Shown here: positions 6,051-49,800 of the stretch, piece after piece
Numbering within the stretch: position 1 is the first letter of the stretch
Layout: each line of letters starts with the position of its first letter
Source: Macrostomum lignano
Lineage: Eukaryota
Assembly (NCBI GenBank): GCA_002269645.1
Contig: NIVC01002789.1
Location: 76,297-140,296 of the forward strand
Length of the DNA: 64,000 nt
Direction: 5' to 3'
Notes under the pieces: generated by a model
The model's input: only the letters and a program-made list of their open reading frames with translations
What the model was told of the DNA's origin: nothing
Database searches by the model: none
Position numbers and translations under genes: made by a program

Positions 6051-6096
<46 letters not shown>

Positions 6097-7750: not shown

Positions 7751-8391
7751 AAAAGACGAGAAGCCGGAGGCAGACGTTCGGAGATCTCTGAGCTCCGGTG
7801 GATCCGCAGCAGACAGCCACGGCAGCGGCAGGGCGCCAGCACACAGTCAGGAATGCATCAGGAAGTCCCTCGTGCCCGGGCCTCTCAGACAGCTGCATGG
7901 AGGGTTATAAAAGCTGTGGGTGCGCGGCTGAAGAGGGTGCCGATAGATCACAGCTGAGGAATGCGCTCCGACCGGGGGATCGGGGCCTCAAGAAAAAAGT
8001 CTGGCTCTGATTCGGGCAGCGCAGCAAAGCGGAGCCGACTTGCATGTTCATTGTGAAAGTCGCACTTCCGCAAAATACAAGCGGGCAGTGGCTGCACCCG
8101 GTCGGCTGTGACTAATCACTGGCAGACTCGGGCCTGACCTTCGTGTCCTGAAGCCGCTGGTGGGCGTTTCAGCGCTGGCCGTGATGCTGTTTTGCTCCAC
8201 TTAGCTGCAAGACTGCTTTTACAAGCCACTCTGAAGGGCAATCAGAATTGGAATGCGCTGAAAAATAAAAAATGAACAACAAAAACTTGTTGGCTAACTT
8301 TTTGTGTGCATCGCTTGCATCGGCTGTACAGCGTCGTCCTGAGTTCGATTTTAGCTTGACTGTTTAAAGTTTGAGTAGTTCAGCTAAAAAG

Positions 8392-11300
8392 GACCCACAG
8401 AACTTCTTGACCCACTGAACTCCTTGACCCACTGAACTCCTTGACCCACTGAACTCCTTGAACCAAAGAACTCCTTGACCCACTGAACTCCTTGACCCAC
8501 TGAACTCCTTGATCCAAAGAACTGCTTGACCCACTGAACTCCTTGAAACACTGAACTTCTTGACCCAAAGAACTCCTTGACCCACTGAACTCCTTGACCC
8601 ACTGAACTCCTTGACCCACTGAACTCCTTGACCCATTGAACTCCTTGACCCACTGAACTCCTTGACCAATGGAACTGCTTGACCAAAAGAACTCCTTGAC
8701 CCACTGAACTCCTTGACCCATTGAACTCCTTGACCCACTGAACTCCTTAAAACACTGAACTGCTTGACCCACTGAACTTCTTGACCCAAAGAACTCCTTG
8801 ACCCACTGAACTCCTTGACACACTGAACTTCTTGACCCAAAGAACTCCTTGACCCACTGAACTCCTTGACCCACTGAACTCCTTGACCCACTGAACTCCT
8901 TGACCCACTGAACTCCTTGACCCATTGAACTCCTTGACCCACTGAACTCCTTGACCCACTAAACTCCTTGACCCATTGAACTCCTTGACCCACTGAACTC
9001 CTTGACCCACGGAACTGCTCGACCCACTGAACTCCTTGACCCACGGAACTCCTTGAACCAAAGAACTCCTTGACCCACGGAACTCCTTGACCCACTGAAC
9101 TCCTTGATCCAAAGAACTGCTTGACCCACTGAACTCCTTGACCAATGGAACTGCTTGACCCACTGAACTCCTTGACCAATGGAACTGCTTGACCCACTGA
9201 ACTCCTTGACCCACTGAACTCCTTGACCCACTGAACTCCTTGACCCACTAAACTCCTTGACCCACTGAACTCCTTGAAACACTGAACTCCTTGACCCACT
9301 GAACTCCTTGAAACACTGAACTGCTTGACCCACTGAACTTCTTGACCCAAAGAACTCCTTGACCCACTGAACTCCTTGAAACACTGAACTCCTTGACCCA
9401 CTGAACTCCTTGAAACACTGAACTGCTTGACCCACTGAACTTCTTGACCCAAAGAACTCCTTGACCCACTGAACTCCTTGACCCACTGAACTGCTTGACC
9501 CACGGAACTCCTTGACCCACTGAACTCCTTGAAACACTGAACTGCTTGACCCACGGAACTCCTTGACCCACTGAACTCCTTGACCAATGGAACTGCTTGA
9601 CCCACTGAACTCCTTGACCAATGGAACTGCTTGACCCACTGAACTCCTTGACCCACTGAACTCCTTGACCCACTGAACTCCTTGACCCACGGAACTCCTT
9701 GACCCACGGAACTCCTTGACCCACTGAACTCCTTGACCCACTAAACTCCTTGACCCACTGAACTCCTTGACCCACTGAACTCCTTGACCCACGGAACTCC
9801 TTGACCCACTGAACTCCTTGACCCACGGAACTGCTCGACCCACTGAACTCCTTGACCCACGGAACTCCTTGACCCACTGAACTCCTTGAAACACTGAACT
9901 GCTTGACCCACTGAACTTCTTGACCCAAAGAACTCCTTGACCCACTGAACTCCTTGACCCACTGAACTCCTTGACCCACTGAACTCCTTGACCCACGGAA
10001 CTCCTTGACCCAAAGAACTCCTTGACCCACTGAACTCCTTAAAACACTGAACTGCTTGACCCACAGAACTGCTTGACCCACGGAACTCCTTGACCCACTG
10101 AACTCCTTGACCCACTGAACTCCTTGACCCACTGAACTCCTTGACCCACTGAACTCCTTGAAACACTGAACTGCTTGACCCACTGAACTTCTTGACCCAA
10201 AGAACTCCTTGACCCACGGAACTCCTTGACCCACTGAACTCCTTGACCCACTGAACTCCTTGACCCACGGAACTCCTTGAACCAAAGAACTCCTTGACCC
10301 ACGGAACTCCTTGACCCACGGAACTGCTCGACCCACTGAACTCCTTGAAACACTGAACTGCTTGACCCACTGAACTTCTTGACCCAAAGAACTCCTTGAC
10401 CCACGGAACTCCTTGACCCACTGAGCTCCTTGACCCACGGAACTGCTCGACCCACTGAACTCCTTGACCCACGGAACTCCTTGAACCAAAGAACTCCTTG
10501 ACCCACGGAACTCCTTGACCCACTGAACTCCTTGACCCACGGAACTGCTCGACCCACTGAACTCCTTGAAACACTGAACTGCTTGACCCACTGAACTTCT
10601 TGACCCAAAGAACTCCTTGACCCACTGAACTCCTTGACCCACTGAACTCCTTGACCCACTGAACTCCTTGACCCACGGAACTCCTTGACCCAAAGAACTC
10701 CTTGACCCACTGAACTCCTTGAAACACTGAACTGCTTGACCCACAGAACTGCTTGACCCACGGAACTCCTTGACCCACTGAACTCCTTGACCCACTGAAC
10801 TCCTTGACCCACTGAACTCCTTGACCCACTGAACTCCTTGAAACACTGAACTGCTTGACCCACTGAACTTCTTGACCCAAAGAACTCCTTGACCCACGGA
10901 ACTCCTTGACCCACTGAACTCCTTGACCCACTGAACTCCTTGACCCACGGAACTCCTTGAACCAAAGAACTCCTTGACCCACGGAACTCCTTGACCCACG
11001 GAACTGCTCGACCCACTGAACTCCTTGAAACACTGAACTGCTTGACCCACTGAACTTCTTGACCCAAAGAACTCCTTGACCCACGGAACTCCTTGACCCA
11101 CTGAGCTCCTTGACCCACGGAACTGCTCGACCCACTGAACTCCTTGACCCACGGAACTCCTTGAACCAAAGAACTCCTTGACCCACGGAACTCCTTGACC
11201 CACTGAACTCCTTGACCCACGGAACTGCTCGACCCACTGAACTCCTTGAAACACTGAACTGCTTGACCCACTGAACTTCTTGACCCAAAGAACTCCTTGA

Positions 11301-14069
11301 CCCACTGAACTCCTTGAAACACTGAACTGCTTGATCCACTGAACTTCTTGACCCAAAGAACTCCTTGACCCACTGAACTCCTTGACCCACTGAACTCCTT
11401 GACCCACTGAACTCCTTGACCCACTGAACTCCTTGACCCACTGAACTCCTTGAAACACTGAACTCCTTGACCCACGGAACTGCTCGACCCACTGAACTCC
11501 TTGAAACACTGAACTGCTTGACCCACTGAACTTCTTGACCCAAAGAACTCCTTGACCCACTGAACTCCTTGAAACACTGAACTCCTTGACCCACTGAACT
11601 CCTTGAAACACTGAACTGCTTGACCCACTGAACTTCTTGACCCAAAGAACTCCTTGACCCACTGAACTCCTTGACCCACTGAACTGCTTGACCCACGGAA
11701 CTCCTTGACCCACTGAACTCCTTGAAACACTGAACTGCTTGACCCACGGAACTCCTTGACCCACTGAACTCCTTGACCAATGGAACTGCTTGACCCACTG
11801 AACTCCTTGACCAATGGAACTGCTTGACCCACTGAACTCCTTGACCCACTGAACTCCTTGACCCACTGAACTCCTTGACCCACGGAACTCCTTGACCCAC
11901 GGAACTCCTTGACCCACAGAACTGCTTGACCCACGGAACTCCTTGACCCACTGAACTCCTTGACCCACTGAACTCCTTGACCCACGGAACTCCTTGACCC
12001 ACTGAACTCCTTGACCCACGGAACTCCTTGACCCACTGAACTTCTTGACCCAAAGAACTCCTTGACCCACGGAACTCCTTGACCCACTGAACTCCTTGAC
12101 CCACTGAACTCCTTGACCCACGGAACTCCTTGAACCAAAGAACTCCTTGACCCACGGAACTCCTTGACCCACGGAACTGCTCGACCCACTGAACTCCTTG
12201 AAACACTGAACTGCTTGACCCACTGAACTTCTTGACCCAAAGAACTCCTTGACCCACGGAACTCCTTGACCCACTGAGCTCCTTGACCCACGGAACTGCT
12301 CGACCCACTGAACTCCTTGACCCACGGAACTCCTTGAACCAAAGAACTCCTTGACCCACGGAACTCCTTGACCCACTGAACTCCTTGACCCACGGAACTG
12401 CTCGACCCACTGAACTCCTTGAAACACTGAACTGCTTGACCCACTGAACTTCTTGACCCAAAGAACTCCTTGACCCACTGAACTCCTTGAAACACTGAAC
12501 TCCTTGACCCACTGAACTCCTTGAAACACTGAACTGCTTGACCCACTGAACTTCTTGACCCAAAGAACTCCTTGACCCACTGAACTCCTTGACCCACTGA
12601 ACTGCTTGACCCACGGAACTCCTTGACCCACTGAACTCCTTGAAACACTGAACTGCTTGACCCACGGAACTCCTTGACCCACTGAACTCCTTGACCAATG
12701 GAACTGCTTGACCCACTGAACTCCTTGACCAATGGAACTGCTTGACCCACTGAACTCCTTGACCCACTGAACTCCTTGACCCACTGAACTCCTTGACCCA
12801 CGGAACTCCTTGACCCACGGAACTCCTTGACCCACTGAACTCCTTGACCCACTAAACTCCTTGACCCACTGAACTCCTTGACCCACTGAACTCCTTGACC
12901 CACGGAACTCCTTGACCCACTGAACTCCTTGACCCACGGAACTGCTCGACCCACTGAACTCCTTGACCCACGGAACTGCTCGACCCACTGAACTCCTTGA
13001 CCCACGGAACTCCTTGACCCACTGAACTCCTTGAAACACTGAACTGCTTGACCCACTGAACTTCTTGACCCAAAGAACTCCTTGACCCACTGAACTCCTT
13101 GACCCACTGAACTCCTTGACCCACTGAACTCCTTGACCCACGGAACTCCTTGACCCAAAGAACTCCTTGACCCACTGAACTCCTTGAAACACTGAACTGC
13201 TTGACCCACAGAACTGCTTGACCCACGGAACTCCTTGACCCACTGAACTCCTTGACCCACTGAACTCCTTGACCCACTGAACTCCTTGACCCACTGAACT
13301 CCTTGAAACACTGAACTGCTTGACCCACTGAACTTCTTGACCCAAAGAACTCCTTGACCCACGGAACTCCTTGACCCACTGAACTCCTTGACCCACTGAA
13401 CTCCTTGACCCACGGAACTCCTTGAACCAAAGAACTCCTTGACCCACGGAACTCCTTGACCCACGGAACTGCTCGACCCACTGAACTCCTTGAAACACTG
13501 AACTGCTTGACCCACTGAACTTCTTGACCCAAAGAACTCCTTGACCCACGGAACTCCTTGACCCACTGAGCTCCTTGACCCACGGAACTGCTCGACCCAC
13601 TGAACTCCTTGACCCACGGAACTCCTTGAACCAAAGAACTCCTTGACCCACGGAACTCCTTGACCCACTGAACTCCTTGACCCACGGAACTGCTCGACCC
13701 ACTGAACTCCTTGAAACACTGAACTGCTTGACCCACTGAACTTCTTGACCCAAAGAACTCCTTGACCCACTGAACTCCTTGAAACACTGAACTGCTTGAT
13801 CCACTGAACTTCTTGACCCAAAGAACTCCTTGACCCACTGAACTCCTTGAAACACTGAACTCCTTGACCCACTGAACTCCTTGACCCACTGAACTCCTTG
13901 ACCCACTGAACTCCTTGACCCACTGAACTCCTTGAAACACTGAACTGCTTGACCCACTGAACTCCTTGACCCACTGAACTCCTTGACACACTGAACTCCT
14001 TGACCCACTGAACTCCTTGACCCACGGAACTCCTTGACCCACGGAACTGCTCGACCCACTGAACTCCTT
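8392..14069. repeat. 17-bp satellite (GAACTCCTTGACCCACT)n, about 334 units, with higher-order repeats
   Basis: Constant 17-bp phase; a rare GAGCTC variant recurs at 10421, 11101, 12274 and 13566 (spacings 40, 69 and 76 units). Confidence 0.98.
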
Positions 14070-25200: not shown

Positions 25201-26504
25201 TCTGTAGATGCCTGTCATTGATCTACATCTCTGTGTCTGTAGATATACATGTGTCTATAGATGCCTGTCATTGATCTACATCTCTGTGTCTGTAGATATA
25301 CATGTGTCTATAGATGCCTGTCATTGATCTACATCTCTGTGTCTGTAGATATACATGTGTCTATAGATGCCTGTCATTGATCTACATCTCTGTGTCTGTA
25401 GATATACATGTGTCTATAGATGCCTGTCATTGATCTACATCTCTGTGTCTGTAGATATACATGTGTCTATAGATGCCTGTCATTGATATACATCTCTGTG
25501 TCTGTAGATATACATGTGTCTATAGATGCCTGTCATTGATATACATCTCTGTGTCTGTAGATCTACATGTGTCTATAGATGCCTGTCATAGATCTACATC
25601 TGTGTCTGTAGATGTACATGTATCTATAGATACCTGTAATTGATCTACAAGCGTCAATAAAGACGTGGTATAGATCTACATGTGTCCATAGATGCCTGCT
25701 GTACATCCACATGTGTCTATAGATTCCTACTGTAGATCAAAATCTGTCTCTGTAGACGTCGGCTATAGACGTACAAGTGTTCATAAATGCTTGCCATTGA
25801 TCTACAAGCGTCTATAGAAAAGTGTTATAGATCTCTACAAGTGTCTATAGATGCCTGCTGTAGATCTACACGTGTCTATAGATACCTAGAGATATCTGGA
25901 GATCCACGAGTCTATAGAGACCTGTGTAACCACGATGCCCTATAGATTTAAGCTTCTGTTTACACATGTCTATAGAAAAACCCGCTGCAGATCTACAGGC
26001 GCCTATAGATTCCTGATTTTCTACCGCTCAAAACATGTGCCTACAGATGTCTGCTCAATATCTACAGACACTAATACTCAAAAGATTTGTCTGTACAGCA
26101 ACAGGCGCTCGGCTCACCCGCGGCGTTGGCTCAGCCAGCTCCATCCGCTGCTGCCTCTCCTGATCCAGCAGGCTCTGCGTCTCCAGCTGCTGCCGCCGCA
26201 GCCGCTCCAACTCTCGACGCTGCCGGGCGAGGTCGCGCTCCAGCTGCCGGCAGGAGCGGCACGGAGCCGCCGCAGGAGGGGCGTCGGCAGGGACAAACCG
26301 AACCGAGTGCGGCGCCGCAGCGGCAGCCGACGGCAGGAAGGCATCCGGAGGCAGCAGGAGGCTGTCATCCAGCGAGGAGGCAACATCGGTGGTGGCAAAG
26401 CTGGTTGCCATGGGCAACTGCGGTGCGGACTGAGACTCGGGATCGCAATAGTAGTAATTATTATTATTTTGGTTAGTTCGCTGTCTGTCTAAGAAAGCGG
26501 CCAT
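22278..26504 (-). CDS. CCHCR1: Coiled-coil protein, probable CCHCR1/HCR homologue, about 460 aa; exons 26504-26118, 24821-24588, 23781-23479, 22736-22278 (all phase 0)
   Basis: Four GC-rich exons join in frame with GT-AG borders (CGG|GTGAGC, TGCAG|GAC, ACG|GTAAGT, TGTAG|GAG, AAG|GTGCAG, CGCAG|CTG). Motifs WRPRLYKALVQ, AREQAKLAAALAQSERR and RLRLVEGERNLL resemble recalled CCHCR1 segments WREKVFALMVQ, EHAKAVVSLRQIQRR and RLQELERDKNLM. Gene model confidence is higher than confidence in the name. Confidence 0.7.
22745..23400. repeat. 19/20-bp minisatellite (GAGATTGATGGACTGGGAT)n filling intron 3
   Basis: Direct reading. Confidence 0.93.
23845..24607 (-). repeat. 33-bp minisatellite filling intron 2; unit = end of exon 2 plus the donor site
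   Basis: Minus-strand unit CAGACAGACAGCTGAGACAGACG|GTAGGTGGGG, about 22 copies. Confidence 0.93.
24875..25640. repeat. 35/53-bp composite minisatellite filling intron 1, decaying to about 26050
   Basis: Units AGATGCCTGTCATTGATCTACATCTCTGTGTCTGT with or without AGATATACATGTGTCTAT. Confidence 0.92.
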
Positions 26505-26859
26505 TGTGGGGATGCTCTGGTCTCTCTGAAAGCGAGTTCAATATTTCATCTATTAATTCTTAAAACGAAAAAAATCGGTACAAATGAAAAAATGTAAAAA
26601 AAAGAGTATAACAATGAAAACTATCCTGGCGCAAAAATCGACTTTCATATGATTATTCCTTCGTTATTAATTACATTTTAAAACGCTTGGATTGGAAAAA
26701 TGCATCATTATAGATCTAGTATAAAACCAGGAAGATACCGTAGAAGTGAGAGGGGAGGCTTCAATAGAAGAGAGGGCAGGGAGTGAAGTATAGAGCAGAG
26801 GTGAGAAAGCCCAGTCAGAATTTAGACAGGTTAAAAACCACAAGTCCTCAGACAGGACA

Positions 26860-26889
26860 CAGTCAGACGACAGACAAAGACAGACAGAC

Positions 26890-26928
<39 letters not shown>

Positions 26929-26959
26929 TATAGATGGACAGACAAACAGACAGACAAGC

Positions 26960-27000
<41 letters not shown>

Positions 27001-27031
27001 TATAGATGGACAGACAAACAGACAGACAAGC

Positions 27032-27071
<40 letters not shown>

Positions 27072-27200
27072 GACAGGCAGACAGACAGACAGACAGGCAG
27101 ACAGACAGACAGACAGACAGACAGACAGGCAGGCAGACAGACAGACATACAGACAGGCAGGCAGGCAGGCAGACAGGCAGACAGGCAGACAGACAGGCAA
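26860..27200. repeat. (GACA)n microsatellite in the MRM1-CCHCR1-like spacer
   Basis: Direct reading. Confidence 0.95.
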
Positions 27201-27227: not shown

Positions 27228-29029
27228 TCAGGCCGCAGCAGACCGCAGCCAGCCCGAGACGCAGTGCAGCAGGATGCCGGCCGCCACTCCCACATTTAGA
27301 TGCGGCATGGCGCAGGCGGCGCCAGCTTGTGGAATTCGCAGCACCAGGTTGCAGAGGCTCAGAAGCTCAGCTGACAGGCCGGAGCCCTCGCTGCCAAGCA
27401 GCAGAAGCACCGGACCGCTGGGCGGATGCGGCAGCAGCTCCGACAGCCGATCGACGCCGGCGCAAGGCACTCCAGGGGCGCCGTCATCGCCTCCCGAGCT
27501 GCCTAGCGCCAGCCAGCCAGCCTGGCGCCATTGGCGCACAAACTCAGCGCTGCTGGTGGGCAGGGCGCGCAAGTCCGTGGCCTCCAGAGCGCCGCAGCTC
27601 ACCTTGGAGACCACTGGCAGAGGGGGGCAGCTGTGGGTGCCCGGTATGAGCACCGGGCTGATACCGTAGAACAGGCAGGTGCGGAGCAGACTGCCGAAGT
27701 TAAGGATGTCCACCACCTGCGGGTGCGTGCTGATTCATGTGATCTTGCCCATTCTTCAATGCATCTCTTGCCGATTCTCTCCTATGCATCTCTTGCCGAT
27801 TCTCTCCAATGCATCTCTTGCCCATTCTCTCCAATGCATCTCTTGCCGATTCTCTCCAATGCATCTCTTGCCCATTCTCTCCAATGCATCTCTTGCCGAT
27901 TCTCTCCAATGCATCTCTTGCCGATTCTCTCCAATGCATCTCTTGCCGATTCTCTCCAATGCATCTCTTGCCGATTCTCTCCAATGCATCTCTTGCCGAT
28001 TCTCTCCAATGCATCTCTTGCCGATTCTCTCCAATGCATCTCTTGCCCATTCTCTCCAATGCATCTCTTGCCGATTCTCTCCAATGCATCTCTTGCCGAT
28101 TCTCTCCAATGCATCTCTTGCCGATTCTCTCCAATGCATCTCTTGCCGATTCTCTCCAATGCATCTCTTGCCGATTCTCTCCAATGCATCTCTTGCCGAT
28201 TCTCTCCAATGCATCTCTTGCCGATTCTCTCCAATGCATCTCTTGCCGATTCTCTCCAATGCATCTCTTGCCGATTCTCTCCAATGCATCTCTTGCCGAT
28301 TCTCTCCAATGCATCTCTTGCCGATTCTCCCCTGCATCTCTTGCCGATTCTCTCCAATGCATCTCTTGCCGATTCTCCCCTGCATCTCTCACCCATTATA
28401 CCCTGCATCTCTCACCCATTATACCCTGCATCTCTTGCCCATTCTACCCTGCATCTCTTCCCCATTATACCCTGCATCTCTCCCCCATTATACCCTGCAT
28501 CTCTTCCCCATTCTCCCCTTCATCTCTTCCCCATTCTCCCCTTCATCTCTTCCCCATTCTCCCCTGCATCTCTTCCCCATTCTCCCCTGCATCTCTCCCC
28601 CACCTGGTCCAGCAGCACACACAGCCGACTCGCCGCCAGCTCAGAGCGGCAGTCGGAGGCACAGCCGGGCAGCACAGGCACAGGGAAGTGTCCGCACCGC
28701 AGCGCGAATCCCTGATGCGCCCGACCCCGGCACAGAGCGGCCAGTTCGCGCCTGTCAGCGTACCTGACCAGGTGAGCATAGCTGGCAGCGATGAGCTGGC
28801 GCAGCTCGGCCGAGCTGGAGCTGTCGCAGCCGAAGTCTTCAATGACGTCGCTTTGCCCTTGGTGCCGAATGTCAACGTAGATTTCGTCAATTCGACGACG
28901 GCGAGACAACAGCGCCTGCCAGACCGGGTGAATGCCGTACACCAGCTCGGAGCCGCCGCCGCCGCTGTTGCTGAACAACCTGTGGCACAGCAGCAGCGAC
29001 AGTCGGGCAGCTGACGGTCGCAGTAGGAG
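27228..29029 (-). CDS. MRM1: Mitochondrial rRNA 2'-O-methyltransferase 1 (SpoU/TrmH family); exons 29029-28604 and 27716-27228; start Met probably supplied by a spliced leader
   Basis: Motifs ELVYGIHPV, GRAHQGFAL, VLLDQ|VVDILNFGSLLRT, LLLLGSEGSGL and LNVGVAAGILL; phase-0 intron CAG|GTGGGG...CCGCAG|GTG; the N-terminus resembles a mitochondrial presequence. Confidence 0.88.
27745..28600. repeat. 23-to-25-bp minisatellite (TGCATCTCTTGCCGATTCTCTCCAA) filling the MRM1 intron
   Basis: Period 25 in the homogeneous lower-coordinate part, 23 near the donor. Confidence 0.95.
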
Positions 29030-29097
29030 CTGGAGAAAAAGGGCTGTCTGAAGAAGCCGGTCGGTGAAATATTGGAGATTCGAAAGTTGGAATGTGA

Positions 29098-29570
29098 CGG
29101 TGGCCCAGCAACTGGGGATCTGAGAGGCTGGCATAGCAACTGGGGATCTGGGAGACTGGCCCAGCAACTGAGGATCTGGGATGCTGGCCTAGCAACTGGG
29201 GATCTGGAAGGCTGGCCTAGCAACTGGGGATCTGGGAGACTGGCCCAGCAACTGGGGATCTGGAAGGCTGGCCCAGCAACTGGGGATCTGGAAGGCTGGC
29301 CCAGCAATTGGGGATCTGGAAGGCTGGCCCAGCCAGCAACTGGGGATCTGGAAGGCTGGCCCAGCCAGCAACTGGGGATCTGGAAGGCTGGCCCAGCAAC
29401 TGGGGATCTGGAAGGCTGGCCCAGCAACTGGGGATCTGGAAGGCTGGCCCAGCAACTGGGGATCTGGAAGGCTGGCCCAGCAACTGACGGTCTGGGAGGG
29501 CGATGGCCCAGCAACTGAGGATTTGGGAGGCTGGTGGCCCAGCAACTGAGGATCTGGGAGGCTGGCACAG
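29098..29570. repeat. 28-bp minisatellite (GGCCCAGCAACTGGGGATCTGGAAGGCT)n in the RPL31-MRM1 spacer
   Basis: About 16 units read directly. Confidence 0.93.
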
Positions 29571-29779
29571 CAACTACCTTTCTAGAACTAATCACAAGCC
29601 ACAAGCACAGGTAGAGATGCTCTCTAAATAATATGAAAGTAAAGAACAAGCGCAGAGACAGTGCAATCCAGCTAAGAACACGCTCAACAGCGTCAGCCCC
29701 TGTATTTCATGCTCAATCAAGAACCTGCCCTCGCAATCTATCAGCAAGTCAGTCCCATCTAGTCAAGTTTAACCTCGCA

Positions 29780-30142
29780 CTACTCGGCCTCAACATTGAT
29801 GGTCTGCTTGCCCTTGAACTCGGCGCAGGGCACGTAGGAGACCAGGGTGTACAGCTTGTGCGCGCTGTCCTCGTCCTCGTTGCGCTTCCTGGCCAAGCGG
29901 ACGCGGACGCGGAACGGCACATTGCGGACGCCTTGGCTCCACACGAACTTGTTCAGCCGGGTGTCCAGCCGCACGTCCGGGGTGCCCATCATTCTCTCCG
30001 CGAATTTGCGAATCTCCGTCATTGCACGCGGTGCCCGGCGCTTGAAACCGATGCCGTGAATGCGCTTGTGCAGGTTGATGGTGTACTCCCGGGTCACCAC
30101 GTCTTTTAGGGCGCTCTTTTTCTTCTCACGTCGGGGAGCCAT
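29780..30142 (-). CDS. RPL31: 60S ribosomal protein L31 (eL31), 120 aa
   Basis: [26 protein letters not shown]...[28 protein letters not shown] is the eL31 signature; an acceptor-like CCGCCAG lies 3 nt upstream of the ATG. Confidence 0.97.
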
Positions 30143-30340
30143 GGACTGGCGGGCATGCAATTGGGGGATTTTTGTTCTGTAGACTTGACAATAAATAATT
30201 TTTGTTTTGTAGACTTGACAATAAATAATTTTTGTCTGTTTCACATTGCTGCCACTTCAGTTAGGATCTCTAGGCTGAATTCAGACCTTGCAGGATTCAA
30301 ATTATAATTTTCCAAGTGTTACTGTTAGTAGAATATATAT

Positions 30341-30377: not shown

Positions 30378-30379
30378 TC

Positions 30380-30448
<69 letters not shown>
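30378..30448. repeat. (GACA)n microsatellite at the GC-rich/AT-rich transition
   Basis: Direct reading. Confidence 0.95.
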
Positions 30449-35455: not shown

Positions 35456-38400
35456 AGGTATATTATTAGTGGAAGGCCAGAAGGGCCTTCTTTTTTACAG
35501 GTTTTTTATCATTTTTACCAGAAAATCCAACTTTCTATTGTAGCAAATCTCATCATTGAATTTCAATGGATGCATTTTGGTTTAGTTGGGGGTTAGGATT
35601 GTTAGTGTATATTATCGATGATGTATTTTGTTGTAACTTCCGAAAGTGCGCCCCAATTTAAAAAGCGCTCTCGCATCAGGCCATGTTGGTACCTTTGGTG
35701 GAGTAGTGACGCGGCACCTCGAAATATAAAATCAGAATCGAGTTTGAATTACGTCTCGACAAAGTGCAGGGTCGTTCTCAAATTCTGGGAGGAGGGAAAA
35801 TTTTAACAATTTTCGGAACATTTACTATTGTTACTGCCGTATTGAAAATAATAGGACACTTTCATCTGTGAATAAAGATAATTTTTGGGTTGAAATTTAT
35901 GTTGCAAAAGTGTTTTAAGTTGTCTTGCGGTATTAGGCGATATTAGGTGATGAAAAAATTCAAATTCAATCACTTCACCGATGTCCTAATTTTTGACACT
36001 ATGATGTCTGTAGCTAAAAAAAGTTGTTGTTGAGTTGAAAACTTGCTATATTACATTTAAAATGAAAGCTTATATAAATTTAATTTAAGATTTTTTTAAA
36101 GCTTAATAAACTGCACTATAAATGATTTTATAGACGCTTAACTGTACGCCTAGCATTTCCGGTGGGATAGCCTCTTTGCGTCTCACAAAATGTATTTTTC
36201 AGCCGACGTCTAGAATGTGCGCTTAAAATGATACATTTTGATGCAGATAATTAGAAAAACATGTCTTATTATCTTTTTGTAAAAAATTGTTATGAAATAG
36301 AGCACTATTGTTGATAAAAATAATTAAAAGCAACCATGCATCGCAATAAACTCCTACTTTGAAGCACAAAATACATATCCTGTAACCACACTAGCATTCT
36401 CCATGGAGCACCTTTTGAGCTGAAATTTTACACAGATATCCAGTAAAGTAAACTGAGCAAATGATTTTTTTTGTTTTTGAAAATACTTCAATTTGGCTAT
36501 GTATCAGTTAGTTCATTGGACATATTTATTATATTTTTATTAGAATCCTTGTAACCAAGCTACAGAGAAACATGTGCAAAACTGGACCTTGAAATTTGAC
36601 CTGAATGATCAGCAAATGTGTATCTCGAAATGATTTTTTTTGTTTTCATCAAGTCATTCTATGCTAATTTTTTCTGAAGGGAAAGATACCATGTATTTAG
36701 AGTCAATAGGGGAAGCATTTAGACTTATTCAATAGTCATTAAAATTGCAACTATATTATTATAATATAGTAATAATATTATACATGTATTATATAGTAAT
36801 ATTAACTTCTAAGATGCCCTTATAAATTTAGGTAAAGACAACAGGCCTTAATTAATTAATCAGCATTTTGAAGAAACTGACCTTATACAGATGGGCCCCA
36901 AGCTAAGAAATGAATGTAGAGCTTATTTCGTGTAAAGTATAAAAATCAATTTATTATAATAATAAATACTCCTAATAAATTGGTTAAATTAGTTATTTAC
37001 CTTGAATTAATTTAATTTAATAAAGAAATATATAAATTTGTTTCACTTCTTACTGCATTTAAATAGAGTACCTCTCTACTATACTATAGAAGTATAGTAA
37101 AAGTATATGGTAAAAAAGTATAGTAAAAAATTTTCTTTGGTTTAATCCCAGCTTGCCTCAGTTTTTTTGTCTTAATACGAGCTAGATAGTAAGTGTTGAT
37201 TAATTTGCTCCATCACCTTTTGCCACGGAAACAGCACATGTCGGACATGCAACACTCTTCCTGATCCCTGGATTCAAGATGACTGCTTCTGCTTCTTCAA
37301 TGCTTGAAAACTGAGCTCATGGAGCTTTAGGTTATGCTGTCAGAGTGCTGCTGCCGGTGCTGTGTGTGTATGTGTGTGTCTTCTGCGGGTAGGTTCCCTG
37401 TCCCTCAGTTTAGCCACTGTTGTGGGCTAACTGGAGGAATTGCCGTTGTCGGTGCTGCAGGTGGCACTACATGGTAGTATTGACGCTGTCAGTGACGCTG
37501 GCAAAGGCTTGGACGAAGCTAGGTGCCGTCATTGTCAGGAGGACATGCGTGTGCTGCTTAGACCAGTGCGCACATTCGACTGGACTCGTATCTGGTGCAG
37601 TCTGGTGTATTCACTGAGATTGTGTGGATCTGCCTCCTCGCATCACCTCAACCAGGCTCAATTTCTTTTGTAGAATTTTCGTGCGCTGCTTAACTGCATC
37701 TTGTGCCTGCTGAGTGATGCCAAGAATTGTGCCACACAATAATTTGGCCCATAAACTACTCGTATATTATACATATGTATGCACAGCACACACACACGCA
37801 GTTCATTCACATTTAACGTACTAGTTAATGGAATTCTCATCTCATGAGCTCTAGTCTATGGACAAACCTGAAATTACTAGAATATCTAGACAGATCTAAA
37901 CTTCTTTGAGCAGCGCGCTGCGCTGCGAGCAAATACATGTAGATTCCTTAGCGCAACTAATTAATAGTGTAGTACAGTCTACAGCCTGAAGTAGCCTGTG
38001 TAAGATGCGGAGGGATGATTTTTGCATAGGAAGCCACTACGGTAAGGTTGATGGAACTATGGGGAGGTGAGAGATTCAAAGCGAGGGATGGAAGCCATGC
38101 ATAGTTCGATCATAAGTTTGATTATTGCATGAGTCTGGGGATGCATTAACGAGAGGCAGACGAGAGCATAGAAATAAAGCGGGCTAAATATATTAATACA
38201 CAAAATTACATGTACTAGCTAGTAATTTCAGAATGGTCAGCGACTCCTCCGATTTGTATCCGCGACCGCGTGCCCACAAATCCCCGGCAGACCCTGTCGC
38301 AGTTGGTGGTTGTGCACAGAATACAATGTAATAATTCAATTTTGTCTATTTTCCAAAAAGTTTCAAAAAATGAATTAATTAAAATAAATTTGAATTATTT

Positions 38401-41566: not shown

Positions 41567-44266
41567 TGTGACGTTGCCAGTTTGAGGTGGTCCCGAAAAG
41601 GGCCGTCGGACTATAATTTCCCTTGTAATTTCTCATATTAATTCCTCCAATAGTTTATTTTAACGTTTACTTATAGTAGCGTGCAAATAATTTTTATCAA
41701 CTGCTAATTCACTGTGTATTTGATAGACCTTGCGCCCGTCTGTAAATTTTGGCACGATCGATAATTTTAAGTTCTCTCGCCAGCCAATGAAAACCACTCG
41801 TGCTTCGCGCTACCCCCCTCTGCGCTCCTTTATTAAACCCCCCGTCTGGCGGCGGGCTGGTTTTTCACTTCCTTCCTTTCCTTTCCCTTCTTTTCTTTCC
41901 TTCGTGCTGTGCTTGTCTGTTCTTCGCGACTCTTGTTTTCCTTCTCTCTGTCTGGGCCAGCCTGTTACACTGCCTGCCACTGTCTGCCACGGCTAACGCC
42001 AATCTCACCACTACGCATCTGCCACTGTTGTGCTCATCGCCGTTACTCACCACGTTGCATCGTCTTGCATCACTCGCCTACCACTCGACTGCAATCTCTA
42101 ACTCACCTTCAATTCAAAACCATTGTTGCAGCCGCCAGTGCCCCAAAGCGCAATAAGTTCTATATTGATATTAACCGCATCGAATATTGATCTCAACAAT
42201 AAAACCAACTACGGCCAGTTTCCGGCCTTGTATGCCAAGTGCTCCGCTACACAAATCCGCTATCAAGACTTGACTCGATTCATTTGGGACTAAAACGGCC
42301 CTTTTAAGGGTCACGGACAACATCAAATAACGTGACATAATTTTGGAGGTCCCACCGAGACCAAGCTCAGCACTGCCGGTTCGCAACTAAGCGCCACTGA
42401 GATTCTGCTCAACATCAACACGTTCGAAACTAAGCACCGCCGAGACCAAGCTCAGCACTGCCGGTTCGCAACTAAGCGCCACTGAGATTCTGCTCAACAT
42501 CAACACGTTCGAAACTAAGCACCACCGAGACGCCTACTCAGCCCTGCCAGCTCGTAATCAGCGCCATCAAGACTTCCTCTCAGTCCTGCCAGTTTGCAAC
42601 CAAGCACCAGCCACCAGCGAGACTTCTGCTCAGCTCTGCCGGCTCGTGACTGAGCACCTGCCAGCCTGTGCCACGCCTGAGGTTCGGTCCGCAAGGCTGC
42701 AAGAGCCTGTGCCACGTCAGGCCCAGGGGTCCTGACTGCCCGGCTGGTCTTCGCTCGTCGCCGCGGGTCGTCGCTGGTCGTCGCCCTGAGCAACGCGCGC
42801 TGTCAACTGCGTTGAGCTCGAGCTTACGCTCTGCCAAGATAGCTCCGCTGTGTGTGCCAAGCCACGCCAGGTTACGCTGTGCGCTGATTGTTTGTAGGGA
42901 CTATTGCCTGACAGTTAGTCTGGGTGGTTTGCGTGATAGGAATCTCCCCTATTATAGGCTTTTTGTGGTTTGCCCCTGTCAGGCACGTATTTTTGTTAGT
43001 AGGACGCAATCTCTCTCGTCTCTCTCGCGTCATCAACCTCAATTCGTTCTCTCTGGAACCTTACTCTCACTCGTGGTTGCTCCGTTCGCCTCACTCGGGC
43101 TCCTGTCTGAGCTTCATCTCGCACAATGTCCGGCAACGGGGAAGACTTCGGCATGGCGCCTCCCGAGCCTGTGGCGGACCCAGTCGCCGCACAGGCAGTT
43201 AATCCACCAGCCCCAGCCACTGAACCCAGACCCAGCTATGGGCGCCCCATCTGCCCACCCGTTAGGTACCGGGCGTGCCAGGTGTCCGGCCTGCTCCAGC
43301 TGTAGGGTGGCAAGCATTAGTTTGCTCACGCCCTGGGCAAGGCGTTAAACTACCTCCTGTGGCCCCTGTTGGCCACGGGTCCCTGTGGCCCCGCTGTTCT
43401 CCGCCTTCCGCGCCGGTTCTCTCCTTCCTGCCTGTTGGGCGCTTCCGCGCTGGTCCTCTCCCCCCCTGTCTGTTGGGCGCTTCCGCGCCGGTTCCCTCCC
43501 TTCTGCCTGTTTGGCGCGCTGCGCCGTTTCCTGCCTTGGCGCCCCTGCGCGTCTCCGCCTGGCGCGCTGCGCCGTTCTCTGCCGTGGCGCCCTTGCGCCG
43601 TTTCCTGCCTTGGCGCGTGGCGCCGTTTCCTGCCTTGGCGCGTGGCGCCGTTCTTTGCCTTGGCGCGCTGCGCCTTTCTCCGCCTGGCGCACTGCGCCGT
43701 TTTCTGCCTTGGCGCTCCGCGCCGTCCTGTCTCCGCCTTGGGCGCTCCCTCGCCGGTTTCTCCCTCCCGCCTGTTTGGCGCGCCGCGCCGTGTCCCGCCG
43801 CCCTTGGCGCTTGTCGTCGTTCGCCCGCAGTTGTTCGGACTGTGCCTCCGTTCTGTGCCTCTGTGCCGTGCCTCTGCTCTGTGTCCTTTTGCCTCATCCG
43901 TCTTGTCACCTTTGTTCTGTGCTCCTTGCCTCATCTGTCTTGTCACCTCTGTTCGTCCTGTCGTTTTTTTGTGCGTTCGCGTGCCCCGCGCGCTCTGCTC
44001 TGCGCTACTTTTGTAACCAATGTTATTCTCACTGCCATACCTACGTTGACTTTGATTTTCACCATTCATCTACCTGTATTCATTATTTACTGCAGTCTGT
44101 TCCTTTGTTTTCGTATTCCCCTTCAGTCTCTTCACTTCTTTTTGCGAGCGTGTGAAACATCCCATTTTGTTGCGGTGCCGGACCTCGAAAGCCGAGACTT
44201 GACTCGATTCTTTTGGGACTAAAACGGCCCTTTTAAGGGTCACGGACAACATCAAATAACGTGACA
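41567..44266 (+). mobile_element. Non-autonomous LTR element: full 5' LTR 41567-42337, tRNA-Gln PBS, short gag-like ORF, only the last 72 bp of the LTR at the 3' end
   Basis: TGTGACG...CGTGACA ends; PBS TGGAGGTCCCACCGAGA (42344-42360) complementary to the tRNA-Gln 3' end; 44195-44266 matches 42266-42337 at 71/72; flanking AAAA/AAAA fits a 4-bp TSD; 85-bp leader duplication and 25-bp GC-rich internal repeat (about 43390-43810). Confidence 0.8.
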
Positions 44267-44455
44267 AAAAAATCTATAAACTAACCTCTTAAATTCCTAA
44301 TTAATAGTACACTAGACTAATTTTCAAAATATGAATTTTGGCCAAAGATTAGATTAAATAAAGTTAGGGCCTAACTAGGCCCTATTAACATTAATATGTA
44401 TCATGTATGTCATTATAAATATAAATAATTTTGTAAATCATATCTTATTAGATAG

Positions 44456-45271
44456 TGTGACGTTGTCAGTTTAAGGTGGTCCCGAAAAGGGCCGTTGGAC
44501 TGCTGTTTCTCTATAGTTTCAACCCTTCAGTTTCACCGTTTCAACTAAACTTTTCCATTTGTTTATTGCGACGTTTACTTGTAGTGCCCAACGATTTTGT
44601 GGCAATTTCTAATTCACTGTATATTTTGCTATCTTCTCTCGCAACCGTATAAAGTTGGCACGATCAATAATTTTAAGTTCTCTCGCCAGCCAATTAAATC
44701 ACTCGTGCTTCGCGCTACCCCCCCCCTCTGCGCTCCTTTATTAAACCTTCGCCTGGCGGACTGGGGGCTTCACTTGTGTTCTGTGTTCTCTCTCCTTAGG
44801 CTTGTCCTCCGTCCCGTCTGGCTTGCCTAGCCTTGTCTAGCCTTGTTTTCCTTCTCTCTGTCTGGCTGCCTCGAGCCTCCTGACCTCTCGCCACGGCTGA
44901 CGCCAACCTCGCCACTGCTCATCTGCCTGCCTACTGCGTCTCACTGCCTTCACTGTGCTCATTGCCATTGCTCATCACGTTACATCGCCATTGCACCGTT
45001 CGTCTGTCACTTGACTATCCAATTTATCTTCAAAGAAACCATTGTTGCAGCCGCCAGTGCCCAGAAAGCTATAGTTTGTTTATTGACATAAATTCTAACT
45101 AAGCCTAATATTGATACTACCAATAAAACCAACTACGGCAGTCCCTGCCTTTATCGCCAAGTGCTCCGCTACAAAATCCGCTTTACAAGAATTGACTTCA
45201 ACTTATTTTGGGACTAAAACGGCCCTTTTAAGGGTCATCGCATAGCTAGCCGCTACGTCAATAACGTGACA
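44456..45271 (+). mobile_element. Solo LTR of the same family
   Basis: TGTGACG...CGTGACA; colinear similarity to 41567-42337; 4-bp TSD ATAG (44452-44455, 45272-45275). Confidence 0.88.
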
Positions 45272-45797
45272 ATAGCCTAGGTCTAGTTAATAGTCTACAT
45301 TATTAAATTAAGGCCTAACAATATAAAAGGCCAACTTAAGCTTATAAAATAAAGTCTCTATTATCCCCTTGCTTGTTTTCCCCTATTTAAAGTCCAATTT
45401 TTATTGCTTTTTTCCAACCCAGCTTTCTAATGTCATTGTAAGCAGAATGACATCATTTGTGTACATAGCATCATAGGTTACTAAGGAACAGGCTCCACTT
45501 TATGAACTTGATTTGACAAGCCTTTTGGTTTGGCCAAAAACACAACACAATATTTATAGGTAGGTAGGCCTAGGCTGAGGCAAAATTAGGTTTGCTTGTT
45601 AAGATGTAGACAGCACAAAGAAAATGATAAATTTGAATAATCGTTAAAGACAGTTGACCACAGACCTCTATCATCTTATAAATATAAGTTCATACAATAT
45701 TATACCACACAAGGTACAGAGATCAAATGCAGAAATTATTATTTAGCTACTTCTGTCACTATTAATCAGTATAAATTTACTTATTGTCAAAAGAAAC

Positions 45798-46177
45798 GGG
45801 TCTCCCTAAAACACGCACCGCACCGCCCCGAACCGCTACACATTATAACATTTTTTGTCAATGCAGAATTTGATTTCAAAGAAAACAATTTGTTGTAAGA
45901 GTAATGTAACAAATATCTTTAATTATTATTTTAAATATTATTATTATTTTTTATATTCTCGTTTTCATTACTAAATTATATTATTATTATTTTATTAATA
46001 TTATTATTAATATCACTTATTAGTCACCGAATTTTATATTTCGAATTTAAAAAACTAAATTTAATAAAAACTTTGAAGCTTAACAGCAAACGCATTTTGA
46101 AGTGTCTTCAGTTATAGTCCAATTTGTTTTAATGTGTAGCGCTGCAGGGCGGTGCGGGGCGTGTTTTAGGGAGACCC
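45798..46177. mobile_element. MITE with GGG termini and 8-bp TSD (Merlin- or MULE-like), 380 bp
   Basis: TIR GGGTCTCCCTAAAACACGC (19 bp perfect); TSD AAAGAAAC at 45790-45797 and 46178-46185; AT-rich interior. Confidence 0.88.
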
Positions 46178-49014: not shown

Positions 49015-49534
49015 AAAGAGAGGAGAGGCGATAAAGGATAATAAGGGATAAGAGAAAAGGTAGAAGATAATAGTAGAGACGAGGGGGTTAGGTCGATGAG
49101 AGAGAAAGGGGGAGAAGAGGGGAGAGAGGAGAAGCGAGATGAGAGAGATAAGATTAGAGAGGAGAGAGTAGAGAGGAGCGAGTAGAGAAGAGAGAGAAGA
49201 GAGTAGAGATTATAGAGCAGAGAGCTGCAGATGAGAGGAGAAAGGAGAGAGGAGCAGAGAGGAGAGAGGAAAGAGGTGAAAAGAGAGATGAGAGATTAAA
49301 GGGAAGAGAGAAGAGATAAAAATACATCTCTACATCTCAAAGGTTGTAGAGATGAGAGAGGTGCAAGGAGAGATGAGAAATGAGAGATCAGAGAAGATGA
49401 CAGATGAAAGAGGGGGATGAGGCAGCAAAGACGAGAGCGAACAGACGGGAGATGGGAGTTTAGATAGAACGAGGAGAGATAAGAGAAAAGATATTACAGA
49501 GATGAGAAGAGAGAGGAGAATAGAAATGGGAGAG

Positions 49535-49593
<59 letters not shown>

Positions 49594-49800
49594 GAGGGGT
49601 AAGAGTAGAGAGGAGAGATGAGATAGAGTAGAGGAGAGAGGAGAGAAGATGGAAGTGTTGAGAGAGGGGAGAGTGAGGAATGAGAAGAGGGGAGAGAAGA
49701 GAGAGTAGAGAGCAGAGAGAAAAGAGAAGAGATAAAAGAGGAGAAAGGAGAGATGAGATAGCAGACGAGAGAGAAGAGAGGAAACAGAAGAGAAGATATA
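49015..49800. repeat. GA-rich low-complexity repeat
   Basis: Direct reading. Confidence 0.9.

What the first reader, a model, noticed from the sequence alone, without database searches (positions are those of the whole stretch)
28960..29045. MRM1 appears to lack its own start codon; a spliced-leader AUG would complete a mitochondrial presequence
After the strong acceptor CCCTTTTTCTCCAG (AG at 29031-29030) the frame reads CTC CTA CTG CGA..., with no Met before the conserved domain. Flatworm spliced leaders end in AUG, which is known to serve as an initiator. Joining it gives MLLLRPSAARLSLLLCHRLFSN, an Arg/Leu/Ser-rich, acid-free presequence of the kind MRM1 needs. The only upstream in-frame ATG lies inside the 28-bp minisatellite and would add an implausible 35-aa extension.
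Basis: partly seen in the sequence, partly recalled or inferred. Interest (0 to 1): 0.7.

Follow-up and report, generated by a model that had tools for sequence, protein, structure and literature searches.

The report
Flatworm MRM1 gene borrowing spliced-leader AUG
A mitochondrial rRNA methyltransferase gene of the flatworm Macrostomum lignano has no start codon of its own and most likely takes it from the AUG at the end of the trans-spliced leader, a mechanism known in flatworms since 2006, so this is a clean new example and not a new phenomenon.

Summary
On the minus strand, a pyrimidine tract and acceptor (CCCTTTTTCTCCAG, AG at 29031-29030) are followed directly by an open frame. That frame encodes a two-exon, 304-codon MRM1/RlmB-type SpoU methyltransferase with no in-frame ATG before codon 279.

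The host is Macrostomum lignano or a near-identical relative. Its 35-nt spliced leader ends in ATG.

Two homeologous copies in the published Mlig_3_7 assembly keep the acceptor and the whole ORF. Neither has the window's in-frame upstream ATG. One copy has a different upstream ATG, and the other has an in-frame TAG six codons before the acceptor.

The coding signature (GC3 0.81 against 0.54) switches on at the acceptor. In that assembly's annotation, both neighbouring genes (RPL31 upstream, a coiled-coil gene downstream) have 5' ends that start at AG acceptors. This suggests an operon-like cluster.

With the leader AUG, the N-terminus is 28 acid-free residues, net +3, with an RLF|S cleavage motif. 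Its length matches the Schistosoma mansoni orthologue, which has its own ATG.

No RNA evidence could be reached, so the junction itself is inferred. The mechanism is already known (Cheng et al. 2006), so this is a new member of a known kind, mainly relevant to annotation.

The parts
29030..29043 (-). Pyrimidine tract plus acceptor CCCTTTTTCTCCAG (AG at 29031-29030). This is the proposed SL trans-splice acceptor of MRM1.
   Evidence: for the sequence. It is identical in L001 and L002. The last six bases, CTCCAG, fit the M. lignano trans-splice motif [T/C]TNCAG.
29048..29053 (-). Second candidate acceptor CTTCAG (AG at 29049-29048), 18 nt upstream and also in phase 0. It would add TALFLQ after the SL Met.
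   Evidence: In L002 it reads TTTAG, and its TAG is the in-frame stop.
28604..29029 (-). MRM1 coding exon 1 (142 codons). It holds the presequence-like residues 1-27 and the SpoU_sub_bind domain. There is no ATG in frame.
27717..28603 (-). MRM1 intron (GT...AG, 887 nt), almost wholly a 25-bp minisatellite (27743-28596, 35 copies).
   Evidence: The intron is 339 nt in L001 and 2512 nt in L002.
27228..27716 (-). MRM1 coding exon 2 (SpoU_methylase domain), with stop TGA at 27230-27228.
29101..29575 (-). 28-bp minisatellite in the RPL31-MRM1 spacer (outron or intercistronic region). It holds the window-specific in-frame ATG at 29134-29132.
   Evidence: There are about 2.5 units in L001 and about 17 in L002.
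29780..30142 (-). Intronless RPL31 (eL31) CDS, 120 aa. It is the upstream neighbour on the same strand and the likely first gene of an operon-like unit.
   Evidence: In L001/L002 the annotated 5'-partial CDS starts 2 nt after an AG acceptor.
30154..30161 (-). ATTGCATG, identical to the last 8 nt of the spliced leader, at the position where L001/L002 carry the RPL31 acceptor ATTCCCAG.
26502..26527 (-). Acceptor TTTCAG (AG at 26527-26526) and own ATG (26504-26502) of the downstream coiled-coil gene. The SL AUG would be in frame here too.
   Evidence: The annotated 5'-partial CDS in L002 starts exactly after this AG.

Best explanation
This is the Macrostomum lignano orthologue of MRM1, the mitochondrial large-subunit rRNA 2'-O-methyltransferase of the RlmB/SpoU family. 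It sits between RPL31 and a coiled-coil gene in a same-strand, closely spaced, operon-like cluster.

Its pre-mRNA has no initiator codon. The 35-nt spliced leader, which ends in ...UUGCAUG, is trans-spliced onto the acceptor at 29030, or possibly onto the in-frame one at 29048. The leader's terminal AUG then becomes codon 1.

Translation gives MLLLRPSAARLSLLLCHRLF|SN..., a short, basic, acid-free N-terminal extension that probably acts as a mitochondrial presequence ahead of the methyltransferase domains.

Shown here:
- the gene model;
- host identity and the SL sequence;
- the lack of a conserved genomic ATG;
- the conserved acceptor;
- the composition of the extension.

Inferred:
- the trans-splicing event at this site;
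- use of the SL AUG by the ribosome;
- mitochondrial import and cleavage.
For: 1. Gene identity. Pfam SpoU_sub_bind and SpoU_methylase both hit. The best homologues are vertebrate and Schistosoma 'rRNA methyltransferase 1, mitochondrial' and bacterial RlmB. The SpoU motif residues are invariant in the alignment.
2. Host. RPL31 is 98-99% identical to M. lignano, and the locus is syntenic and 94-99% identical to Mlig_3_7 scaffolds NIVC01001319 and NIVC01000822.
3. The SL ends in ATG (PMC8629364). The final ATG is described as a translation start codon in Macrostomum (PMC10468722). A flatworm SL AUG was shown to initiate translation in S. mansoni, where more than 40 cDNAs require it (Cheng 2006, as cited in PMC9851317).
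4. All three copies keep the acceptor and an intact 304-codon ORF (98.7-98.8% identical, dN/dS about 0.2-0.65). Upstream in-frame ATGs differ: 35 codons up in the window, 46 codons up at another site in L001, and none in L002, which has a TAG six codons upstream.
5. GC3 is 0.81 in codons 1-27 and 0.77 in the rest of the CDS, but 0.54 in the 24 in-frame codons upstream of the acceptor.
6. The acceptor fits [T/C]TNCAG.
7. In the Mlig_3_7 annotation, the 5'-partial CDSs of both neighbours, and of RPS21 and NAC at a paralogous RPL31 locus, begin within 0-6 nt of an AG acceptor, exactly after it in three cases. That annotation pipeline cut transcripts at SL-read peaks (PMC5730564).
8. Spacers are about 275 nt once repeats are subtracted, under the 1-kb operon criterion of PMC8629364.
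9. The N-terminus is 28 acid-free residues, net +3 to +4, with an R-3 type motif RLF|S at residues 18-21. S. mansoni MRM1 has a 26-residue acid-free extension before the same SELLYGIHPV start of the domain.
Against: - No read, cDNA or protein record with the SL-MRM1 junction could be found. MRM1 is absent from the M. lignano proteins in the database, with or without the Met, and no gene is annotated between RPL31 and the coiled-coil gene in Mlig_3_7. That pipeline should in principle have cut a transcript at a strong SL peak.
- The helical hydrophobic moment of the extension is no higher than in shuffles (3948 of 5000 shuffles reached it).
- The SL AUG has a weak context (U at -3, C at +4, read from the sequence).
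- For RPL31 the same SL AUG is out of frame with the real start, so it cannot be an obligatory initiator on every mRNA.
- The window and L001 each have an in-frame upstream ATG that an unspliced transcript could use.
Confidence: 0.72

Rival explanations
1. A cis-spliced upstream first exon supplies the ATG. RPL31 would then lie inside, or beside, the first intron of MRM1.
For: A scan of 13 kb upstream finds three phase-0 ATG...GT[AG]AG candidates. The one at 32258-32196 (MYIHYNKLRSFMTLHIVCSQF) keeps its ORF and donor in L001, and partly in L002.
Against: - Three candidates in 13 kb is about what chance gives.
- The 97% conservation of the 32258-32196 candidate is the same as in the surrounding non-coding DNA.
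- It lies in 32-36% GC DNA, unlike the 65% GC exons.
- No candidate lies between RPL31 and the acceptor except a window-specific one with a poor donor.
- No gene is annotated there in Mlig_3_7.
Confidence: 0.08
2. Translation starts at a genomic in-frame ATG in the un-trans-spliced spacer. In the window this is 29134-29132, inside the minisatellite, giving a 35-residue longer protein.
For: The frame is open from that ATG in the window. L001 also has an in-frame ATG, 46 codons up.
Against: - The two ATGs are at different sites, and each is a copy-specific substitution.
- L002 has none, and has an in-frame TAG six codons before the acceptor.
- The extension is neutral to acidic at its tip (net -1 over the first 25 residues).
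- Its GC3 is non-coding-like.
- It lies in a repeat array whose copy number varies from about 2.5 to 17 between copies.
Confidence: 0.05
3. The SL-capped 5' mini-exon of RPL31 (SL-AUG plus CCCGCCAGTCCATGGCTCCCCGAC) is sometimes cis-spliced from the GTGAGA at 30130-30125 to the MRM1 acceptor. This would skip RPL31 and give [15 protein letters not shown]... The initiator would still be the SL AUG.
For: The donor fits GT[G/A]AG and is in phase 0 with both the SL AUG frame and the MRM1 frame. The RPL31 paralogue that is not followed by MRM1 (L003/L004) encodes the same residues without a GTGAG.
Against: It is a single coincidence found in a scan. The extension would carry an Asp and three Pro. A strong donor inside a highly expressed ribosomal protein CDS would be costly.
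Confidence: 0.04
4. Near-cognate initiation (for example CUG at codon 3, or later Leu codons) on an mRNA without a usable AUG. Alternatively, the gene is a decaying pseudogene that has lost its start.
For: Several CUG and UUG codons lie in the first 20 codons. MRM1 is not in the annotated proteome.
Against: Three copies keep all 304 codons open across an intron, with the catalytic motifs intact and exons more conserved than flanks. A conserved strong acceptor directly before the ORF, in a species whose SL ends in AUG, makes a non-AUG start unnecessary.
Confidence: 0.05

Closest known systems
Flatworm mRNAs that use the spliced leader's 3'-terminal AUG as initiator methionine (Cheng, Cohen, Ndegwa and Davis, J Biol Chem 2006; called 'slORFs' in PMC9851317)
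   Same: The SL ends in AUG. The acceptor is followed directly by an ORF in phase with that AUG. No genomic AUG is available before the conserved protein domains.
   Different: The species is a free-living macrostomid, not Schistosoma. The junction is inferred here, not sequenced. The S. mansoni orthologue of this very gene has its own genomic ATG 25 nt after an acceptor-like site, so the dependence would be lineage-specific.
MRM1 / Pet56 / RlmB, the SpoU-TrmH 2'-O-methyltransferases of the large-subunit rRNA (mitochondrial in eukaryotes)
   Same: It has the SpoU_sub_bind plus SpoU_methylase architecture, the conserved motif residues, and best hits named MRM1 or RlmB.
   Different: It is only 30-34% identical to any database protein. 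It has a very short N-terminal extension (27 residues), like the S. mansoni protein and unlike the 80-150 residues of vertebrates. It has a single Met codon, at 279.
M. lignano SL-resolved operons (Wudarski 2017, PMC5730564; Ustyantsev and Berezikov 2021, PMC8629364)
   Same: The genes are on the same strand. Repeat-adjusted spacers are well under 1 kb and the spacers are filled with repeats, as those authors describe. The neighbours have trans-splice-defined 5' ends.
   Different: Membership of MRM1 in one transcriptional unit with RPL31 is not documented, and the gene is missing from the deposited annotation.

Membership tests
SL-AUG-initiated flatworm mRNA (Cheng et al. 2006 type) | The host's spliced leader ends in AUG | tested here: met
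   The host was identified as M. lignano or a near-identical relative. The published SL is ...TTATTGCATG, and its final ATG is noted as a start codon.
SL-AUG-initiated flatworm mRNA (Cheng et al. 2006 type) | The mRNA is actually trans-spliced to the SL at the acceptor in front of the ORF | not testable with these tools
   No M. lignano reads or cDNAs are reachable. Indirect support only: the acceptor fits [T/C]TNCAG, it is conserved in three copies, and the neighbours have SL-defined 5' ends.
SL-AUG-initiated flatworm mRNA (Cheng et al. 2006 type) | The SL AUG is in frame with the ORF, with no stop in between | tested here: met
   The exon starts at a codon boundary (CTC CTA CTG...) and is open to the stop at 27230-27228. 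This also holds for the alternative acceptor at 29048.
SL-AUG-initiated flatworm mRNA (Cheng et al. 2006 type) | No genomic AUG is able to give the full-length protein | tested here: met
   The first in-frame ATG of the mature exons is at codon 279 of 304. Upstream ATGs are copy-specific, and L002 is closed by a TAG.
MRM1/RlmB SpoU methyltransferase | SpoU_sub_bind plus SpoU_methylase domains with conserved motifs | tested here: met
   PF08032 scores 31 bits (cut-off 22.8) and PF00588 scores 73 bits (cut-off 29.7). N149, R155, E253 and N284 are invariant across 11 homologues.
MRM1/RlmB SpoU methyltransferase | Orthology to MRM1 rather than MRM3 or other SpoU enzymes | tested here: met
   The top named hits are all 'rRNA methyltransferase 1, mitochondrial', followed by RlmB. 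No reciprocal search was run.
Matrix-targeting mitochondrial presequence | N-terminal 15-50 residues that are basic, hydroxylated, free of acidic residues, and carry an MPP-type Arg motif | tested here: met
   The stretch is 28 acid-free residues with 3 Arg and 1 His (4 Arg in L001/L002), 5 Ser/Thr, and RLF|S at residues 18-21. The definition of the motif comes from established knowledge (R-3 motif).
Matrix-targeting mitochondrial presequence | Amphipathic helix | tested here: inconclusive
   The maximum hydrophobic moment is 0.41, reached by 3948 of 5000 shuffles. TargetP and MitoFates were not available.
M. lignano operon (Ustyantsev and Berezikov criteria) | Adjacent same-strand genes, a repeat-adjusted distance under 1 kb, and a downstream gene that is SL trans-spliced | tested here: inconclusive
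   Strand and distance are met: 749 nt from RPL31 to MRM1, of which 475 is repeat, and 350 nt in L001. The trans-splicing status of MRM1 is unproven.

The most novel reading that the evidence does not exclude
All homeologous copies of an essential mitoribosome-maturation gene have lost their own start codon, so MRM1 protein can be made only from SL-trans-spliced mRNA. This would make it an obligate, lineage-specific SL-AUG dependence, because S. mansoni keeps its own ATG. It would sit inside an RPL31-MRM1 operon and so tie mitochondrial rRNA modification to trans-splicing and to a cytosolic ribosomal protein promoter. It would also explain why the gene is missing from the published M. lignano proteome, whose pipeline trimmed the SL, ATG included.
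Probability: 0.55. Interest if true: 0.4.

Novelty: new member of a known kind. Interest (0 to 1): 0.3.

Why it matters
- Annotation. Pipelines that trim the whole leader, ATG included, or that demand a genomic ATG, will truncate or drop such genes. MRM1 is indeed absent from the deposited M. lignano protein set.
- Biology. It would be a clear case, in a genetically tractable free-living flatworm, of a conserved essential gene that depends wholly on the leader's AUG. In this case the AUG also starts an organelle-targeting signal. That makes the role of the SL AUG testable by transgenesis, using a reporter without an ATG and acceptor mutants.
- Limits. It does not change what is known about the mechanism.

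Tried and rejected
- Exact look-up of the window's RPL31 protein: not on record.
- Search for an SL RNA gene in the window with up to 3 mismatches: none.
- Rfam scan of the window at gathering thresholds: nothing.
- Homologue search with the full MRM1: no Macrostomum protein or transcript-derived protein.
- Exact look-ups of MRM1 with and without the Met for all three copies: none in the collection.
- Attempt to learn the locus tag of the downstream gene, to see whether MRM1 was counted as 'g2' of the RPL31 transcriptional unit. The homologue search with exon 1 gave no hits. Five reconstructed 467-aa models were not in the collection.
- Supplements of the two M. lignano annotation papers: no MRM1 or RPL31 entries in the text that is held. 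No paper mentions both Macrostomum and MRM1.
- Hydrophobic-moment test of the presequence: not distinguishable from shuffles, so it is not used as support.
- The 8-mer ATTGCATG is not enriched in the window (3 found against 2.8 expected). Its significance at RPL31 rests on position and on comparison with the homeologs, not on frequency.
- dN/dS between copies has too few differences (11-12 per 915 nt) to be more than suggestive.

Full report
**What is in the sequence.**
- On the minus strand the window reads ...cttcttcagacagCCCTTTTTCTCCAG|CTCCTACTGCGACCG..., with the AG at 29031-29030.
- The frame that opens at 29029 gives LLLRPSAARLSLLLCHRLFSNSGGGGSELVYGIHPVW....
- It runs to a GT donor after 28604 and resumes at 27716, after an 887-nt intron made almost entirely of a 25-bp minisatellite. 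It ends at TGA 27230-27228, for 304 codons.
- Pfam finds SpoU_sub_bind (residues 29-112) and SpoU_methylase (136-293) above their curated cut-offs.
- The best database hits are 'rRNA methyltransferase 1, mitochondrial' of vertebrates and Schistosoma mansoni (30-34% identity), followed by bacterial RlmB.
- The SpoU motif residues are invariant in an 11-sequence alignment.
- The only in-frame ATG of the mature exons is codon 279.
- Upstream and in frame there is one ATG, 35 codons before the acceptor (29134-29132), inside a 28-bp, 16.5-copy minisatellite (29101-29575), and a TAG at 29191-29189.

**Whose genome this is.**
- An intronless RPL31 gene lies 749 nt upstream on the same strand (30142-29780).
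- Its product is 99% and 98% identical to two Macrostomum lignano proteins, while the next best hits are at about 80%.
- The contigs encoding these proteins are scaffolds of assembly Mlig_3_7, GCA_002269645.1.
- Two of them, L001 (NIVC01001319) and L002 (NIVC01000822), are colinear with the window across RPL31, MRM1 and the next gene, at 94-96% identity in flanks and 98.7-98.9% over MRM1 exon 1.
- The window is therefore a further homeolog or allele of this locus in M. lignano, or a very close relative. M. lignano is a hidden polyploid (PMC10468722).
- The M. lignano spliced leader is CGGTCTCTTACTGCGAAGACTCAATTTATTGCATG (PMC8629364). It ends in ATG, and Macrostomum workers explicitly treat that ATG as a translation start codon (PMC10468722).
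- About 30% of M. lignano genes are trans-spliced and 15% lie in operons. Conserved genes are enriched among trans-spliced ones, and operon spacers are often filled with repeats.

**Comparison of the three copies.**
- The acceptor, its pyrimidine tract and the first codons are identical or nearly so in all three.
- All three keep 304 open codons, with 4-7 amino-acid differences.
- Exons differ by 1.2-1.3% and the 95-nt unique stretch before the acceptor by 3-5%. dN/dS is about 0.2-0.65, from only 11-12 differences.
- Upstream of the acceptor the copies disagree exactly where an own start codon would have to be:
  - The window's repeat ATG is absent from L001 and L002.
  - L001 has a different in-frame ATG 46 codons up, created by a TTG to ATG difference.
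  - L002 has no in-frame ATG, and has a TAG only six codons before the acceptor.
- In L002 a contiguous reading frame therefore cannot contain a start codon ahead of the conserved domain.
- In the window, GC3 is 0.81 in codons 1-27 and 0.77 in the rest of the CDS. It is 0.54 in the 24 in-frame codons upstream. Overall GC rises from 0.47 in the 72 nt before the acceptor to 0.65 in exon 1. Coding character begins at the acceptor.

**Context.**
- The published trans-splice acceptor motif of M. lignano is [T/C]TNCAG at the junction. The MRM1 acceptor ends CTCCAG.
- The deposited annotation was built by trimming SL-containing reads, mapping them, and cutting transcripts at the resulting peaks (PMC5730564).
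- In the fetched loci, four genes have 5'-partial CDSs that begin exactly at, or 2-6 nt after, an AG acceptor:
  - RPL31 in L001/L002 (cccag|CC-CGC...);
  - the coiled-coil gene downstream of MRM1 in L002 (ctttcag|AGAGAC...);
  - RPS21 in L003;
  - NAC in L004.
- Both neighbours of MRM1 thus carry the signature of trans-splice-defined 5' ends.
- The spacers are short once repeats are subtracted: about 275 nt between RPL31 and MRM1, or 350 nt in total in L001.
- This fits an operon-like RPL31-MRM1-coiled-coil unit. By established knowledge of SL operons, an internal gene in such a unit can acquire a cap only by trans-splicing.
- All the neighbouring genes have their own ATG 2-30 nt after the acceptor. 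MRM1 is the exception.

**The N-terminus.**
- With the SL AUG the protein begins MLLLRPSAARLSLLLCHRLFSNSGGGGSE-.
- It has 28 residues without Asp or Glu, three Arg and one His (four Arg in L001/L002), and five Ser/Thr. It carries RLF|S at residues 18-21, which matches the R-3 processing motif as I know it.
- The conserved domain starts at SELVYGIHPV.
- S. mansoni MRM1 has 26 acid-free residues, net +4, before SELLYGIHPV. Vertebrate proteins have much longer extensions.
- The extended forms starting at the window or L001 upstream ATGs have net charge -1 or +1 over their first 25 residues.
- My crude helical hydrophobic-moment test did not separate the sequence from its shuffles. The presequence reading therefore rests on composition, length and motif only.
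- The S. mansoni gene has its own genomic ATG. If the M. lignano gene depends on the SL AUG, that is a lineage-specific state.

**Alternatives.**
- A scan for ATG-bearing, phase-0 upstream exons found one candidate between RPL31 and the acceptor. It uses the window-specific ATG and has a poor donor.
- With a GT[AG]AG donor there are only three candidates in 13 kb, about the number expected by chance.
  - Two of them share one donor and lie at 32258-32196, in AT-rich DNA. They are conserved no more than their surroundings.
  - The third lies inside the first codons of RPL31 and would still use the SL AUG.
- A second acceptor, CTTCAG at 29049-29048, is also in phase and would add six residues. 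In L002 its TAG is the in-frame stop.
- Which of the two sites is used cannot be decided here, but both lead to the same conclusion.
- Near-cognate initiation and pseudogene decay are unlikely, given three intact copies.

**What could not be done.**
- No M. lignano transcript data are reachable. The homologue search returned no Macrostomum MRM1.
- Exact look-ups of all three copies, with and without the Met, failed.
- Even the RPL31 proteins occur only on the NCBI genome scaffolds.
- MRM1 is not annotated between RPL31 and the coiled-coil gene in Mlig_3_7.
- This absence cuts both ways. It is what one expects if an SL-trimmed transcript without an ATG was discarded. It could also mean that no SL peak was seen there.
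- The supplements that are held, and the literature, do not mention the gene.

**Comparison with what is known, and verdict.**
- Use of the flatworm SL's terminal AUG as initiator methionine was demonstrated in S. mansoni in 2006. There the SL AUG is in frame in 28% of trans-spliced transcripts, and more than 40 cDNAs need it (as summarised in PMC9851317).
- The ATG is recognised as a start codon in Macrostomum.
- The finding is therefore a well-supported new member of a known kind.
- Its value is for annotation, and as a convenient test case in a transgenic-capable flatworm.
- I put the probability that the SL AUG starts this protein at about 0.7, and interest at about 0.3.

Noticed in passing
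window 30154-30161 (minus strand), compared with L001 9991-9998 and L002 9991-9998: Directly before the RPL31 5' end (CCCGCCAGTCCATGG), L001 and L002 have the acceptor ATTCCCAG, while the window has ATTGCATG, the last 8 nt of the spliced leader. Three substitutions within 4 nt recreate the mature SL-RPL31 mRNA junction in genomic DNA. They also destroy the AG and plant an out-of-frame ATG. This is either cDNA-templated gene conversion or an error from polishing the assembly with RNA reads of a highly expressed gene.
   Followed up: partly
window 29780-30142, 27228-29029 and about 26526 downwards (minus strand); L001, L002: RPL31, MRM1 and a coiled-coil gene (465-467 aa in the Mlig_3_7 annotation) form a same-strand cluster. 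Its spacers consist largely of micro- and minisatellites: a 28-bp array, (ACAG)n at 26859-27196, and (CAGA)n at 30379-30448. Array sizes differ greatly between homeologs (28-bp array of about 2.5 to 17 copies; MRM1 intron of 339, 887 and 2512 nt).
   Followed up: partly
L001 10372-12635 and L002 10372-15235 (Mlig_3_7 scaffolds): MRM1 is intact in both published scaffolds, but no gene is annotated there and no M. lignano MRM1 protein exists in the protein collection. This may be a casualty of SL trimming combined with ATG-dependent ORF calling.
   Followed up: partly
window 30125-30130 (minus strand): A GTGAGA donor-like site sits in RPL31 codons 5-7. It is in phase 0 with both the SL-AUG frame and the MRM1 acceptor. 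The RPL31 paralogue followed by RPS21 (L003/L004) encodes the same residues without it.
   Followed up: no
L003 11623, L004 12678, L002 15235: For RPS21, NAC and the coiled-coil gene, the SL AUG would be in frame with the genes' own ATG, with no stop between (7-10 extra codons). For both RPL31 paralogues it is out of frame, and on the RPL31 of L001/L002 it would open a 16-codon overlapping uORF.
   Followed up: no
window 38122-38131 (+): There is a ten-base match, TTATTGCATG, to the 3' end of the spliced leader in AT-rich intergenic DNA, followed by a short closed frame. About 0.1 such matches are expected by chance in the window.
   Followed up: no
window 2744-6589 (+): A single 1281-codon ORF at about 70% GC encodes several immunoglobulin domains, an fn3-like domain, a transmembrane-like stretch and low-complexity Gly/Gln runs. 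It is probably a cell-adhesion receptor in one exon.
   Followed up: partly
window about 8360-14060: A roughly 5.7-kb tandem array of about 51-bp period is open in several frames on the minus strand (GQGVQWVKEFSGSRSSV-type repeats) and has a strong negative GC skew.
   Followed up: no
window 44000-64000: An AT-rich block contains intact ORFs of 150-290 codons with no or only weak Pfam hits. One has a sub-threshold aspartyl-protease match at 53220-53672. They are possibly remnants of mobile elements.
   Followed up: partly
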